Assembly: GCF_035594765.1 (NCBI RefSeq)
Contig: NC_085846.1
Coordinates: 23,671,190-23,735,189, forward strand
Length of the DNA: 64,000 bases
Source: Anolis carolinensis
Lineage: Eukaryota
Reading direction: 5' to 3'
Shown: positions 53,335 through 61,700 of the stretch, in pieces
Position numbering within the stretch: the stretch's first letter is position 1
Layout: every line of letters starts with the position of its first letter
The notes under the pieces: generated by a model
Told to the model about the DNA's origin: nothing
The model's database searches: none
What the model saw: only the letters and a program-made list of their open reading frames with translations
Made by a program: the position numbers and the translations under genes

Positions 53335-53959
53335 GGACTTCAACTCACACAATTCCTAACAGCCTCGGATCCTTTCTGCTTAAGGGGTCTGGGGCTGTTA
53401 GGAATTGTAGGAGTTGAAGTCCAAAAAACACCTCAAGGGCCAAAGTTTGTCCATGCCTGTTCTAGAGACTCACCAAAGTCCAAATCTAAGAGCTTTCCAG
53501 TAGTATTCTGCTTTGCCTCTCTCACTTTGCCTCTTTCACTTAAAATGAAGTTAATTTGAAATCCTGGGAGTTGTAATTTGGTGGGGCAACAGCATTCCTA
53601 AACAGCGAAGGCTTACAAAACGTACAGTTCCCATGGCAGTTCCAAGTCGTATCAAACTTCATTAATTCTGCCATGTAGATGCACCCCGAGGCCGCTATGA
53701 TCAGTATCAATTCCTCCTCAAGCTTCACGCCTACCTGGTCACCTTTGGTAAGAGGCCGGCGGATTCTTCTGAAGGCGAGAGACCAGGTCGCCTGGCGGAG
53801 GGGAAACAAACAGAGCAGGATCAGCACCAAAGGCTTCTGTGGCTGCGCTAGGCCGCGGCCCCGCCCCCTTCTCCCTTCCTTCTTCCCTAGCGACCCCACG
53901 GGGGCCTGGCAGCGCTTCCAGCGCCTTTACTTTCTTTCCCCCACCGTTTATTTCCTCAC

Positions 53960-54150
53960 CTTGTGTGACACTTCGTATTTTCTGCCCTTTCTTCCCCCGT
54001 CCCTCAGAACTCCACTCTTTTACTACGAGGGAGGAAACGGGGCGCGACGTTGGCGACCGAGACGCGATGACGTCACCGCGCAACTGATCGCTCGCGCTGT
54101 TCTCCTCCGTGGTGACGTCATCGACAGTGGCGGCTGCTTACCTTATAAAT
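53960..54150 (-). promoter_or_regulatory. DDX42: DDX42 CpG-rich promoter and probable non-coding exon 1
   Basis: CpG-dense island; donor AAG|gtgagg at 53960; two full CRE palindromes TGACGTCA at 54068-54075 and 54113-54120. Confidence 0.7.
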
Positions 54151-54542
54151 AGGCGCAGCACCGTAGAGTCAGAAAGGAGAGTCACACATGCCTTTTTATC
54201 CTCATGGGCTATTTTAAGGAGGATTAAGGCCCCTTCCACACAGCTGAATAAAATCCACACTATCTGCTTTGAACTGTAATATATGGCAGTATGGACTCAG
54301 CTAATCCAGTTCAAAGTAGATATTGTGGGTTATTCAGCCTTGATATTCTGGATTATATGGCTGTGCCACCCCACCTTTGCAATAAGAGACCAGACAACAG
54401 TGTGGGTTGAAATATGGCCAACTTTTATTTAAAACATCTGAATTAACTTTACACCTATCCCTTTCCCCTACTTTCCCCCTTCCCCCAACCTTCCCTCTCC
54501 CAGTTCCCCACCCCCCTTACCCTTTTTACCTTTCACTAATGG

Positions 54543-54833
54543 TCACATTCCTGTTTTTTCCCCTTCCCCTCTCCCCTTTTTCTTTCTCTCCTTTCCCCTT
54601 TCTCCCCTTCTTCCTTCTTCTTGACCAGAATCCTCGCTCTTAGTTTCATAGATCTTTCTTCTTGTTCTTAATTCAGATTTCAGTACTTTCCTCTCAAGGC
54701 GTAGGATATACTTCATGTATTTGTTGATCTTGCGAATGCTTTTCACCAACTGTTCAAGCATTTTTGTATGATCCTGGATCCATTCGTTTTTTGCTTCTAA
54801 AGCGGCTGGTGTTTCTGTCATGGCCTGACTGGG
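54543..54833 (-). CDS. Exon 2 of the putative orphan single-pass membrane protein
   Basis: Acceptor ttgtcatttttcccag|CCC in phase 0; 96 aa charged/helical tail to TGA; AATAAA on - at 54424-54429. Confidence 0.55.
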   Translation of the reverse strand, partial: PSQAMTETPAALEAKNEWIQDHTKMLEQLVKSIRKINKYMKYILRLERKVLKSELRTRRKIYETKSEDSGQEEGRRGERGKERKKKGRGEGEKTGM

Positions 54834-55201
54834 CTGGGAAAAATGACAAAACAAGATCATTGTATCACCTTAAGGGAAAAAAAGAAATAGAGGTTTATCA
54901 ATATGGCCGTTTTCTTTTACTCTTCCTATCTTTGTGTCTCTTAACAGAAGCTTGATGTGTAGATAGTAAGCACAGAAAGCACAGACTAAAGTGACATTTT
55001 CTCAACGTGTCAGTCTGCTGTTAAATACAGGGAGGAGACCTGTAAAAAGTGCTGTAACCTTTTTGTAAGGTTCTTCTTGCAGGCGTCGAGAACAATGTAA
55101 ATATGTTTTCATTAGAAATATGCAAATAAAATAATACATGAGAGACACTCAAATGGGTGGGCCATACCGTTCATTGTATAATGCATACATATAAATGTTA
55201 C

Positions 55202-55489
55202 CTTAACGTTTTTCATGTGTTTCAGTGAAATGTAGAGTATAGATATACCAATAACTGTGACGCATAGCACTGCATCACGAATAAACAACTTCTCTGGGGT
55301 CCTTTCTGTAATGTCTAAGCCAAAAATAATACAGACATTAGATGGCTCTCTCTTCCACAGTTGCTCTCGTTCCTCTGATGACAAATCGAAGCCAGTTGTT
55401 GCCCAGGCTGGTTTTTCATAACTGAGAACATTCTGCAGGAAGACTACAGTCCCCAAGAGAAGCATATAAGAGCAGCCTCCAAGAAACAT
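55202..55489 (-). CDS. Exon 1 of a putative orphan single-pass membrane protein
   Basis: 96 codons: signal-like MFLGGCSYMLLLGTVVFLQNVLS, TM-like AVLCVTVIGISILYISL, then KHMKNVK|gtaaca (phase 0). Confidence 0.55.
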
Positions 55490-55780
55490 CTTTACTGTAT
55501 GGTAGTCAACCAGAAGTACTTGTGTTAGAGAAGCTTCAATATGAGAACATCAGGCATGGAGAAATTCTATGAGGTCATAAAGGTCTCCTGATCTTTATAA
55601 GAAGTGGTCTATGATGTCACGAATACATCAAGGGAGCAGCCCAAGAGAGAGAGAGAGAGAGATAAAATTCTTTCACATATTTACATATTGCTACTTGTAA
55701 ATGACAAACAGTTTGGGAAAGTTTCTTGATATCTTACAAATCATGTTTTTTTAAAAAGGCTTTTATGTTGTGCTTCTATA

Positions 55781-56111
55781 GTAAAGGTCAAGGTAAAGGT
55801 TTTCCCCTGACATTAAGTCTAGTTGTGTCTGACTCTGGGGGTTGGTGCTCATCTCCATTTCTAAGTGGAAGAGCCGGCATTGTCCGTAGACATCTCCAAG
55901 GTCATGTGACTGCATGGAGCTCCATTACTTTCCCGCCAGAGCAGTACCTACTGATTTACTCACATTTACATGTTTTTGAACTGCTAGGTTGGCAGAAGCT
56001 GGAGCTAACAGCAGGAGCTCACCCCGCTTCCCGGATTCTAACCGCCAGCCTTTTAGTCAGCAAGTTCAGCAGCTCAGCGGTTTAACCAGCTGCACCACTG
56101 GGGGGGGCTCC
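55781..56111 (-). mobile_element. Sauria SINE
   Basis: Reverse complement of the family; approximate TSD tgtgctt(c)yatag. Confidence 0.85.
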
Positions 56112-57519
56112 TATGTGCTTCCATAGATTTCATTATTACGATTTCTGCATCTTTTTCTATCATAAGGGATTGGTTAATCACCAATTGGCTAATCACACTG
56201 ACCTACTGTGTCACAAAACGATGTATGTCTAAACGATGCATGAAATGCTTGGAAAGATCTGATTTAGAAGATATGAATAATAATAATAACAACAATAATA
56301 ATAATAAAGTAATTCCTTAAGAGGAGAATGGGAAGTCCCTACCACCCTTTTTTTATTCTCTCATCCTTTCTACTTATCACCTTCTTTTTTTAGGCACTCC
56401 TCCTTCACTATCCTTCATCGTTACATTTTCCTCGCTTTCACTGTAAATATCACTTTTAACACAATAAAAACTATTTAAATCATAATAATAACTTTATCTT
56501 TATACCCCGCCTTCATCTCCCCGAAGGGACTCGACGTGGTTTACATGGGGCCAAGCCCAAGTGTTACAGACATAGTAATAAAACACATCAATATCAAAAC
56601 AGGTCAATAAACATAATAAAATCACATTGAAATAAAACAAGGTTTGATTAAAAAAACTGAGAAAATTCATAAAAATGAACTGGGATGGAGAAAGTGCATA
56701 AAGTGAGGAATGTAAACTAGAGAAAGAAGTAACGGTAAGTAACCCGGGACTATTATTGGTAAGGGGTAAACATAGGAACTATTTCTAACTGAAGGAGCAG
56801 AATAAAGTGCAACAGATATGTTATTGATCACCAGGACGAACCCTAACATGAGGGCAAGGATCATTCACCAAAGGCCTGTTGGAAGAGCCAAGTCTTAGTC
56901 AGCTTTTCAAAATGCTCCTGGTGATCTCTCCTTGCCCAACTCCCCCTACTCCAAAATTAGCAGCCCCTTCCTCCCACGAAAACCCAGTAAATCCCTAATT
57001 AGGGCCCTTCCACACAGCTATATCACCCAGAATATCAAGGCAGATGATCCACAATATCTGCTTTGAACTGGATTATCTGAGCCCACACTGCCATATAATC
57101 CAGTTCAATGTGGATTTTATGCAGCTGTGTGGAAAGAGCCTTAGAAAATGGAAACTGTATACTTGGGGACAGGCTATGAAATCTGGCAACCCTAGTTGTC
57201 ACCATCAGCATGCAGCAGGTTGCCTGATTGGAGTTTTAGGCTCCTCCTACACTGCCCTATATCTCAGGATCTGCTTTGAACTGAATAATATGAGTCTCCA
57301 CTGCCAAATAATCTGGGATCGGACCCTGGGATTTAGGACCAGTGTAGAAGGGACCTCAGTCTTGCCATTCCTATGACTTCTTTTGTACCATTTTGGCTGA
57401 AATCACAATTGGTTGAGAAAGCAATGACTGGAGCAGCAGAGCGCTTGTTTGATTTAACAGCCAGTTCTTATTGTTTTTTATGCCCTTGAACAAGTGCTGT
57501 GATAAAGAAAAATGGTGAC

Positions 57520-58286: not shown

Positions 58287-58438
58287 AGGCCCCTTCCACA
58301 CAGCTGTATGAAATCCCACCTTATCTGCTTTGAACTGGATTATATGGCAGTGTGGACTCAGATAACCCAGTTCAAAGCATATATTGCGGATTATCCGCCT
58401 TGATATTCTGGATTATATGGCTGTGTGGATGGGCCCTG
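58287..58438. mobile_element. Harbinger-like MITE (ggccccttccacacagc termini); relatives at about 39901-40192, 52171-52312, 54227-54366, 57002-57141
   Basis: Inverted termini and internal ataatccagttcaaagcag motifs. Confidence 0.6.
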
Positions 58439-58539
58439 AGTCTACACTGACACGTCATCCAGTTCAATGCAGATAATCTGGATTTTATACGGCAGTGAAG
58501 GGGCCCTAGTTATATTGTTTTTAAGGTTGCGAGCCTTAA

Positions 58540-58788
58540 AAAGCTTCGAGACTCGTTTAAAAGGAGAACGCCAGAGGGAGAGGCGCTCCGAAAACCACCT
58601 TCCCGCTTTCTTTCTCGTTCCGCCTCTTCCTTTCCCAAAGCCTCTAGTTGTCACGGCGCCTGCGCAGGATCACGCAATTTGCGTACTTTACGGTTGAGGA
58701 AAAGAGGAAGGATCCTCCTCCAGCGTTAACTTCGGCAGGGAAGTGTGAAGAGGGCCTCGAAGCGTCGTAGTCACAGCGCCGGTCCGAG
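58540..58788 (+). promoter_or_regulatory. CpG-rich promoter and non-coding first exon of the next + strand gene (probably CCDC47)
   Basis: NRF1-type GCGCCTGCGCA at 58656-58666; strong donor GAG|gtaaga at 58788; no coding exon recognised in the window, identity inferred from the human DDX42/CCDC47 head-to-head arrangement. Confidence 0.55.
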
Positions 58789-61700
58789 GTAAGAAGGGAA
58801 GCGAGCAGCCATAGAAGGGTCGGAGGGGCTTCGAGGAAAGGAGGAAGGCCAAAGGGCGCAGTATTTGCCGCCTGTGGGGCTTCTCCTTTGAAAAGTAGTC
58901 ATTATTCTTCTCCAGGACGAGGTGGTTTCATGCCAGTGGAAGGCCTTCTTTACAGAATGTAGGCCTCTTGGACTCCTGCGTTGCACTCAGAAACCCCAAA
59001 TCTGTATTCAGTGTGAAGGAAAGTTGAGAGTTGTGCGTCCTTATAAGTCAGGGTGACATTAAGGTGAAGCTTTTACGATATTTCTGTGTAGGGTTTGTTC
59101 ATACAGGAAATGTCTTTGCCTTCCTCTGAGGCTGAGAGAGTGTGACTCGTCCAAGGTCACTCGTAGAATAATAGAGTTGGAAGGGACCACATGAGCCATC
59201 CTGGCCAGCCCCCTGCCATGCACAATCAAAACGCCCCCGACAGATGGCCATCTAGCCTCCTTCCAAGGAAGGAGCTTCCGCTACACTCCAAAGCAGAGAG
59301 TTCCACTATTGAACAGCTCTTGCAGTCAGGAAGGCCTTCCCAATGTTCAGAATGAATCTCTTTTCCTGTAATTTGAACCCATTGCTCCGAATCCTAATCC
59401 CCAAGGCAGCAGAAAACAACAACAACAATAATAAATACTTTATTTGTACCCCGCCTTATCTCCCCGAGGGGACTCAGGGCGGTTTCCAACAAAAGTAACA
59501 AAATGGCAAACATTCAATGCCAAAAACAGACAATGATCAATCAAATCAAAACAGTAGATAAAACAATCTCAAAATAAACTTCTTAAACTAAATAAAATAC
59601 ATAATTGAACTTAAATAAACATAATATAACCCATCACACACAATTTCCACAGGCTGAAATAGGTGTACAGTATCTAGGCAAGGATATTTATAAAGGTGTA
59701 CTAGTCTTTCTCCTCATCATATGCTAAGGTGCATAAATGGGTTTTAAAAAGCTTTTTAAAGGAGTGTAGGGTGGGGGCTGTTTTTATTTAAATGGGTTTT
59801 TAAAAGCTTTGTAAAGGAGAGGCGGGTAAGAATTAAATTCTTCTTATTATTATACACCTTTTGATAAAACTCAGTGGGTTTCCATGGTGTTACTACTTTT
59901 GAAAGGACCGGCAGATGAAGATGATTTCAATTTGTATCCTGTCCTTTTTCCCCTGTTTGAAACTCCCCAACTCCCAGAAACCCTAGTTGGCTTGTTCAAT
60001 GGTTAGGAATTCTGGGAGTTGGAGCCCCAAACAGCTGGGGGGCCCTAGTTTGATATACACTGTTTTAATATACACTGTGGAATTAATGCAGTTTGACCCC
60101 ACTTTAACTTCCACAGCTCAATGCTGTGGAATTATGAGAGCTGTAGTTTTACTAGGCCTTTTCCAAACTGCAATCCTGTGATTCTATAGCCTTGAGATGT
60201 AGCAGTTAAAGTGGGATCAAACTGCATTAATTCCACAGTGTAGATGCACCCAAAGTTGGACATAAGAATCTAAAGGAGCTTGTTTCTTAAGGCAGTTGTA
60301 ATTAAACCATAACCCTGCAGATATTGTTGCTTCCAGCTCTACAACCATTCACCATGGACTCTGTTGATCATGGGAGTTGCAGTCCAGTCGCTTCTGGCAG
60401 GATCTTAAACTGTCAAACTTGTCTTACTCTGTCATCTTTGAAAGATAGGAATGGGCAAAGTGTAGCTTTCCAAATGCAGCAATGCAAGGAACCTTCTAGT
60501 ATTCCTCACTATTATTGGAAGTTATTATGGCTAGATCTAATGTGTGTTGTAGTTCAAAAACATATGTGGGGCTGCTATTTGCCTACTTTTGTTCCAAGCA
60601 TTTAGCTGGTTTTGGGTTAATGTCTTAAGCCAGCAGAAAACAAATTGAAACTTCACTTCATGAATTCTGGGGGTATAATAATTTGGGTTGGGGCACCCAA
60701 AGACAAGTTGATGCAGAAAATAGGTTCTGACATTTTTTTAATGTCTTTCAGTCCCCATGAACTCTGACTATCTTCCTTCTCTTCCTTATTCCTTTTCCAT
60801 GCCCCTCCAACCATATTTGTGTGGCCTGTATGATCCTGAAATAGCTAAAGGAGAAAATGTTTAAAAACAAATATGGAGGCAAGTTTCCAGGGTTTTGGTA
60901 TAAAAACTGTAGAGAATCAGCAAGGTGTAGCATTTTCAGTGTTGGACTACGAATATGGAAACCAGGATTTGAATTTCAACCTGGCCATTGAAACCTGTTG
61001 ATTCACCTTAGAAAATTTACACCAGTGATTCTCAACCTGGAGTCCCCAGATGTTTTTGGCCTTCAACTCCCAGAAATCCTAACAGCTGGTAAACTGGCTG
61101 GGATTTCTGGGAGTTGTGGGACAAAACATCTGGGGACCCCAGGTTGAGAACCACTGAGTTACACTTTGTCAACTTCAAAGCAAGGAAAGGGCAAATCCCC
61201 TCTGATCAAATAAATGCTAAAACAACCTTAGCATTGTATGACCTGAAGACACAAAACCAACTGTACATACATGGTAATTACGTAGAATAGGGAGAAAATG
61301 TGTTCACTAAGTCGGTATTACATTATCTCCTATACTGCAGAATTAATTACTGTCTCCTGTATTGTAAAAGCCAAAGTTTCCAGCAACCAGAAAATGAGCT
61401 TTTAAAGCCTTGACTTATGATAGACCTCAGATTCAAAGTTCCAAATCTCTTGTGTACTTAGAAATTCCATACCAGCTCTTTGTAATTTGACTTCGGTGTT
61501 TCTTTTCAAACTCAGGCCAAGCTGGTTTATTTTTCAACTGACAGTGTTTGTCTGAAATGACTTAATACAGCCAGCGTGGTTTTAGTGTGGGACCATAACT
61601 CTGAAGATCAGGGTTCGAATCCCTTCTCAGCTATGGAGCCCACTGACCTTGGATTAGCTACATTCAGCCTCAGAAAAATCAAAGGCAGATCCCCTCTGAA

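What the first reader, a model, noticed from the sequence alone, without database searches (positions are those of the whole stretch)
54424..55620. Compact orphan gene for a single-pass membrane protein between the DDX42 and putative CCDC47 promoters
Seen in sequence: two minus-strand ORFs join in phase 0 through a canonical 368-nt intron (AAG|gtaaca at 55202; tttttcccag|CCC at 54833) into a 192-aa protein. It has a signal-peptide-like N-terminus, about 50 aa of ectodomain, a hydrophobic TM (AVLCVTVIGISILYISL) followed by basic residues (KHMKNVK), and a helical K/R/E-rich tail. A TATAAA lies at 55594-55599 and an AATAAA at 54424-54429, about 115 nt after the stop. The region is free of the TE families seen elsewhere in the window. 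I do not recognise the protein. Inference: a lineage-specific or fast-evolving gene that is likely unannotated.
Basis: partly seen in the sequence, partly recalled or inferred. Interest (0 to 1): 0.85.

Follow-up and report, generated by a model that had tools for sequence, protein, structure and literature searches.

The report
Dispersed copy of anole membrane-protein family
This is a real two-exon gene, but not a lone orphan: it is a stray copy of an undescribed, fast-changing family of small membrane proteins found so far only in anole lizards, most likely used in developing sperm.

Summary
The gene model is real: 96+96 codons, a canonical 368-nt phase-0 intron, TATA and AATAAA at the stated places. 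It is not a lone orphan. Five RefSeq 'uncharacterized' Anolis carolinensis proteins (44-70% identical per exon) share its layout and intron position. They lie with unannotated and broken copies on one chromosome (300-306 Mb). Nothing outside Anolis was found. The window copy is a DNA-level duplicate of at least 3.1 kb, set between the DDX42 promoter and the next CpG island. Family-wide dN/dS is about 0.8-1.0, with no significant positive-selection class. In three close paralogs exons diverged 2-5 times more than the intron, at all codon positions, as in snake-venom genes; the window copy itself shows no such excess. A CpG-free CRE-like site beside the TATA is kept in four copies. Size and layout match the spermatid protein TEX50, but sequence homology to TEX50 could not be tested. 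Splicing of this copy was not seen: three RNA runs of unknown tissue gave only unspliced contigs, and its donor has a private +5 change. Best reading: an expanded spermatid membrane-protein family; this copy is probably intact but may be decaying.

The parts
55612..55619 (-). CRE-like site TGACATCA, 20 nt upstream of the TATA
   Evidence: seven of eight bases kept at the same place in the LOC134295872 copy
55594..55599 (-). TATAAA box
   Evidence: TATAAA or TAATAAA at the aligned place in four paralogs, deleted in the broken copy L003:9082-9857
55570..55577 (-). CpG-free CRE-like site TGACCTCA (reverse of the CREM/GCNF 'CRE/NR' site)
   Evidence: exact at the aligned place in LOC134295872, LOC134296785, LOC107982358; motif class described in PMC2853129
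55202..55489 (-). Exon 1 coding part, 96 aa: signal-peptide-like N-terminus, ~50-aa ectodomain, transmembrane helix, basic stop-transfer residues
55223..55273 (-). Predicted transmembrane helix A73-L89
   Evidence: hydropathy; less hydrophobic than in the paralogs (2.03 against 2.27-2.77)
54834..55201 (-). 368-nt phase-0 GT-AG intron; donor GTAACA where six paralogs have GTAAGA
   Evidence: 91% identical to the introns of the closest paralogs
54887..54900 (-). 14-nt intron motif invariant in all seven copies (possible distant branch point or GATA-type site)
54543..54833 (-). Exon 2 coding part, 96 aa + stop: long cytoplasmic helix, then a low-complexity basic tail
   Evidence: helix 119-175 with pLDDT about 71-89 in the paralog model; purine-rich repeat 54570-54618
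54424..54429 (-). AATAAA poly(A) signal
   Evidence: same context in the unannotated copy L001:692-1488
54365..57454 (-). Duplicated block co-linear with Anolis carolinensis cluster copies (gene, intron and about 2 kb of 5' flank)

Best explanation
The gene is a dispersed, DNA-level duplicate of an anole-restricted family of ~190-aa type I membrane proteins whose main cluster lies on another chromosome. SHOWN: family membership, shared intron, co-linear duplicated block, birth-and-death pattern (intact, partial and frameshifted copies), open frames kept despite dN/dS near 1. INFERRED: a compact TATA plus CpG-free CRE-like promoter drives it in post-meiotic male germ cells through CREM; the protein enters the secretory pathway by its signal peptide, shows a ~50-aa ectodomain on the acrosomal or plasma membrane, and ties that membrane to the sperm-head cytoskeleton through its basic cytoplasmic helix, in the way TEX50 works in mouse. 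It may be a diverged, amplified TEX50 offshoot (about 0.4, from layout and a motif resemblance recalled from memory). This copy is probably still under selection for an open frame (about 0.6).
For: Five RefSeq paralogs with the same layout; same splice sites in all copies; block co-linearity; omega 0.98-1.01 in exon 1 and 0.79-0.93 in exon 2 over a tree of about 3 substitutions per codon with frames kept, and about 15% of exon-1 sites invariant; TGACCTCA kept in 4 copies and two CRE-like sites in 260 nt (chance about 0.002, post hoc), a motif enriched in testis-specific promoters (PMC2853129); TEX50 is 177-189 aa, two coding exons, 23-aa signal peptide, helix at 78-100, post-meiotic, present in reptiles (PMC12435281, PMC13711846); window-branch changes are fewer in exons (1.7%) than in the intron (3.3%), and a neutral copy would stay open only about 5% of the time under my assumed indel rate.
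Against: No tissue-resolved expression for any member. No spliced read for this copy among the listed joints; RNA contigs cross both splice sites unspliced. No search returned TEX50 or any non-Anolis protein. The exon-intron difference on the window branch is not significant (p=0.16), and the open frame is what brought the gene to notice. CRE-like sites are short and were picked after looking. No positive-selection class is supported (p=0.27 and 1.0).
Confidence: 0.5

Rival explanations
1. The family is functional, but this copy is a young, decaying duplicate. It landed beside the DDX42 promoter, is poorly spliced, and the RNA seen over it is divergent (antisense) transcription from that CpG-island promoter.
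For: Private +5 G>C at the donor. All 5 polarised exon-1 changes on its branch are nonsynonymous. Divergence from the frameshifted copy L003:9082-9857 is flat at 7.0/7.3/7.3% in promoter, exon 1 and intron. Weakest transmembrane hydrophobicity of six copies. Only unspliced, low-depth RNA contigs, with depth falling away from the DDX42 promoter in run X1. No RefSeq protein for it.
Against: Both frames, start, stop, TATA, CRE-like sites and poly(A) signal are intact, whereas the broken copy has lost its TATA. AAG before the GT is a strong donor context (own knowledge). Only 15 of 521 joints were shown, the tissues are unknown, and contigs give no strand.
Confidence: 0.3
2. The family is a fast-evolving surface protein of immune cells, skin or glands, diversified by host-pathogen or chemical-signal conflict, not a sperm protein.
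For: Copy-number turnover, dN/dS near 1 and exons more divergent than introns are also typical of immune and venom families (PMC7285919). Unspliced RNA was found in runs of unknown tissue.
Against: No Ig, lectin or other immune domain by Pfam, PDB or fold search. The ectodomain is only ~50 aa. The promoter motif points to testis.
Confidence: 0.15
3. The ORFs are a transposon or endogenous-virus relic and not a host gene.
For: The stretch is multi-copy and dispersed, and lies among repeats.
Against: Spliceosomal intron at a fixed codon in all copies; no relative in viral contigs; no Pfam match; depth of about 100-170 in the DNA run against thousands to a million over the flanking repeats; flanks are co-duplicated.
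Confidence: 0.04

Closest known systems
Anolis carolinensis LOC134295872, LOC134296777, LOC107982358, LOC134296785, LOC107983323 (RefSeq 'uncharacterized' proteins)
   Same: Same family: 44-70% identity per exon, same intron position and phase, same layout, shared promoter elements.
   Different: They lie at 300-306 Mb of contig CM069368.1, three of them inside a complexin gene. The window copy lies beside DDX42, lacks the 9-aa cysteine-containing stretch near the C-terminus and ends in a basic low-complexity tail.
TEX50 (testis-expressed 50; posterior-ring protein of the sperm head)
   Same: Size 177-189 aa, two coding exons, 23-aa signal peptide, one helix at about 78-100, present in reptiles (PMC12435281, PMC13711846). 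From memory only: a similar Trp-x3-Gly-aromatic-acidic motif after the signal peptide and a Pro-Ser-x2-Cys motif.
   Different: TEX50 is described as one conserved gene (65.5% human-mouse); this family is multi-copy with dN/dS near 1. No search here returned TEX50, and homology was not testable.
Snake-venom PLA2-type 'accelerated evolution' gene families
   Same: Introns more conserved than coding exons, with changes spread evenly over the three codon positions (PMC7285919).
   Different: A membrane protein with no toxin fold or gland evidence; the pattern holds in the close paralog group only, not between the two deep groups nor on the window branch; no significant omega>1 class.

Membership tests
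Anolis LOC134295872-like family (undescribed) | Significant sequence similarity over both exons | tested here: met
   phmmer E=1e-24 for exon 1; tblastn 1e-13 to 1e-31 for exon 2
Anolis LOC134295872-like family (undescribed) | One phase-0 intron just after the basic post-helix residues | tested here: met
TEX50 | ~180-190 aa type I membrane protein, 23-aa signal peptide, helix near residues 75-100 | tested here: met
   hydropathy against PMC12435281; SignalP/DeepTMHMM not available
TEX50 | Two coding exons | tested here: met
   the intron position in TEX50 was not compared
TEX50 | Sequence or profile homology to TEX50 orthologues | tested here: inconclusive
TEX50 | Conserved synteny with the TEX50 locus | not testable with these tools
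   Neighbours here are DDX42 and, for the cluster, a complexin gene; the reptile TEX50 locus could not be fetched
TEX50 | Post-meiotic, testis-enriched expression and posterior-ring location | not testable with these tools
   Runs are coded and of unknown tissue; promoter motif only
Venom-type accelerated-evolution gene families | Exons more divergent than introns at all codon positions | tested here: met
   Close paralogs: exons 16-34% against intron 4-11%, Fisher p 2e-3 to 7e-12; positions 1/2/3 equal; not on the window branch
Venom-type accelerated-evolution gene families | Significant class of codons with dN/dS above 1 | tested here: not met
   M2a against M1a p=0.27 (exon 1) and 1.0 (exon 2), 6-7 sequences, low power
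Venom-type accelerated-evolution gene families | Secreted toxin fold and gland expression | tested here: not met
   Transmembrane layout; no Pfam, PDB or fold match; expression untested
Transposon or endogenous viral ORF | Homology to mobile-element or viral proteins | tested here: not met

The most novel reading that the evidence does not exclude
Anoles have amplified a TEX50-like sperm-head membrane protein into a dispersed family of ten or more copies in which gene conversion evens out introns and flanks while selection keeps divergent exons, the venom-gene pattern in a structural sperm protein. That would offer a testable molecular handle on sperm-shape change and gamete incompatibility in the anole radiation.
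Probability: 0.25. Interest if true: 0.7.

Novelty: new variant of a known kind. Interest (0 to 1): 0.42.

Why it matters
Lineage-restricted, fast-evolving, multi-copy membrane-protein genes are a familiar kind, above all in testis, so the class is not new. This family has no name, no Pfam model and no paper mentioning its members. If it is sperm-borne, it is a candidate for studying sperm evolution and reproductive isolation in a model adaptive radiation. The exon-faster-than-intron pattern, best known from venom genes, would gain a non-toxin example in a lizard. The copy beside DDX42 also shows how a gene can land between two housekeeping promoters.

Tried and rejected
Pfam on both exons and on three paralogs: nothing at the curated cut-offs (the PepSY_TM_like_2 hit at 23.6 bits is below its 27-bit cut-off and covers only helix plus coiled coil). 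phmmer over 1.84 billion representatives: three Anolis hits and three repeat-driven false hits. Two profile searches: Anolis only. ESM Atlas by features and structure, twice, and a fold search with a low-confidence AlphaFold2 model (pLDDT 60, pTM 0.30): only generic helical matches. PDB by sequence: nothing. Viral contigs: nothing. Rfam: nothing. Papers naming the five LOC ids: none. Earlier scan notes: none bearing on this. An upstream AG at 54870-54869, which would give a stop three codons later, looked like a private splice defect, but two annotated paralogs have it too, so it was dropped. The paralog-like RNA contig in run X2 matches none of the fetched copies, so it did not identify the species. 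and part of 56 lost their tree steps to a thread setting; rerun. The joined 192-aa protein was not sent to any search; exons were searched apart by reference, with full-length RefSeq paralogs as stand-ins. The N stretches (4066-4208, 4423-4575) were left alone and no human contig was fetched.

Full report
OBSERVATION. The two minus-strand frames are there: 55489-55202 gives 96 codons and 54833-54543 gives 96 codons and a stop, 192 aa in all. The donor, acceptor, 368-nt intron, TATAAA (55599-55594) and AATAAA (54429-54424) are at the stated places. Exon 1 has a hydrophobic N-terminus and a hydrophobic stretch A73-L89 followed by basic residues; exon 2 is charged and helical. DDX42 lies downstream on the same strand: DEAD and Helicase_C exons and a 5' UTR intron at 53791-53958 that is spliced in three runs. 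The second promoter is a CpG island at about 58500-58900; its identity as CCDC47 was not verified.

IT IS A FAMILY, NOT AN ORPHAN. Exon 1 finds Anolis carolinensis LOC134295872 at E=1e-24. Further searches add LOC134296777, LOC107982358, LOC134296785 and LOC107983323, all 'uncharacterized', 190-244 aa. All sit on contig CM069368.1 at 300-306 Mb, three in tandem inside a complexin gene. The same loci hold unannotated pieces: an intron-plus-exon-2 copy (L001:692-1488), a frameshifted and truncated copy (L003:9082-9857) and partial exon duplicates. In a DNA run of the window's own organism the gene has summed contig depth of about 110-170 against about 17-26 on unique flanks, with many 90-95% variants; the tool warns that this is not a copy number, but it shows further copies. 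One such variant contig matches none of the fetched copies. No relative outside Anolis was found by phmmer over 1.84 billion proteins, two profile searches, Pfam, PDB, the ESM Atlas or viral contigs. The window is from an anole, A. carolinensis or a close relative (inference from 7% non-coding divergence to the nearest copy).

HOW IT GOT HERE. Window 54365-57454 is co-linear with the LOC134295872 copy over gene, intron, promoter and about 2 kb of 5' flank. The intron is kept, so this was a DNA-level duplication, not retroposition. Two deep groups of copies, 25-30% apart even in introns, coexist in the cluster, and the window copy belongs to one of them. The simplest direction is therefore cluster to window (inference). 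In mammals DDX42 and CCDC47 are head-to-head neighbours (own knowledge, not tested), so the block probably widened an old divergent promoter pair.

EVOLUTION. Codon models give omega 0.98-1.01 for exon 1 and 0.79-0.93 for exon 2. About 15% of exon-1 sites are invariant, and a class with omega above 1 is not significant (p=0.27 and 1.0). Yet six or seven copies keep open frames over about 3 substitutions per codon, which neutral drift would not allow (annotated copies are chosen for being intact). Among the close paralogs the exons differ by 16-34% while the intron differs by 4-11% (Fisher p from 2e-3 to 7e-12), and promoter and far flank differ by 10-12% in the one pair where they can be compared. 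The excess is spread evenly over the three codon positions and includes fourfold sites. This is the pattern reported for habu venom PLA2 genes (PMC7285919). Because silent sites are raised too, amino-acid selection alone does not explain it; gene conversion that evens out non-coding DNA while old exon variants are kept is my preferred reading (inference). The excess falls on the LOC134295872, LOC134296777 and L001:692-1488 branches (p=5e-4, 1e-7, 3e-4). The window branch shows the opposite trend, 1.7% in exons against 3.3% in the intron, not significant.

IS THIS COPY ALIVE? For: all signals are intact, and a neutral copy at 3.5% divergence would stay open about 5% of the time under my assumed indel rate. 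Against: its donor reads GTAACA where six paralogs read GTAAGA; its five polarised exon-1 changes are all nonsynonymous; its distance from the broken copy is flat at 7%; and in runs X1, X2 and X5, which are RNA by the spliced DDX42 intron, exact-match contigs cross both splice sites unspliced at depth about 4-10. No 54833-55202 joint is among the 15 listed, but 506 were not shown, tissues are coded, contigs give no strand. I put function of this copy at about 0.6.

MECHANISM. The layout is that of a type I membrane protein: signal peptide, ~50-aa ectodomain, one helix, basic stop-transfer residues, long cytoplasmic helix (inferred from hydropathy and a low-confidence model). The promoter has TGACATCA before and TGACCTCA after the TATA; TGACCTCA is kept at the same place in three paralogs, including both deep groups. 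[quoted passage not shown] The closest known protein in build is TEX50: 177-189 aa, two coding exons, 23-aa signal peptide, helix at 78-100, post-meiotic, present in reptiles, needed for the posterior ring and head-tail link of mouse sperm (PMC12435281, PMC13711846). From memory the ectodomains also share a short Trp/Gly/acidic motif and a Pro-Ser-x2-Cys motif; that is a lead only. I therefore propose CREM-driven expression in spermatids and a role as a membrane-to-cytoskeleton tether at the sperm head, with the variable ectodomain exposed to selection. I do not file it as TEX50: homology was inconclusive and synteny and expression were untestable.

VERDICT. A real gene model and an undescribed anole-restricted family, of a familiar kind (fast-evolving, amplified, probably testis genes), with an unusual exon-over-intron divergence pattern in the paralogs. 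Function is inferred, not shown. Interest 0.42.

Noticed in passing
window 53791-53958 (-): 168-nt GT-AG intron in the DDX42 5' UTR, spliced in runs X1, X2, X5 and unspliced in X15.
   Followed up: yes
window 54068-54075 and 54113-54120: Two perfect CRE palindromes (TGACGTCA) in the DDX42 CpG-island promoter, the only two in the window, about 300 nt past this gene's poly(A) signal.
   Followed up: no
L003:9082-9857: Unannotated broken copy, 93% identical per site to the window copy: TATA region deleted, frameshift and stop in exon 1, cut off inside the intron, directly upstream of LOC107982358.
   Followed up: partly
L001:692-1488 and 1658-1870: Unannotated copy with an open exon 2, the same purine-rich tail and AATAAA as the window copy; a chimeric exon-2 fragment follows it.
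   Followed up: partly
L002:9893-10057: A partial duplicate of exon 1 lies just upstream of LOC134296777 and supplies its extra 36 N-terminal residues; the RefSeq start may be an artefact.
   Followed up: partly
window 54887-54900 (-) and aligned places in L001-L003: A 14-nt intron motif about 55-65 nt before the acceptor is invariant in all seven copies although the introns differ by up to 30%.
   Followed up: no
window 58500-58900: CpG island with a likely first-exon donor at about 58789 on the + strand; no coding exon found up to 64000, so the CCDC47 label is unverified.
   Followed up: partly
window 54221-54366, 57001-57143, 58287-58440: Three copies of a MITE-like repeat in and beside the duplicated block; the one at 57001 lies within the stretch co-linear with the LOC134295872 flank.
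   Followed up: no
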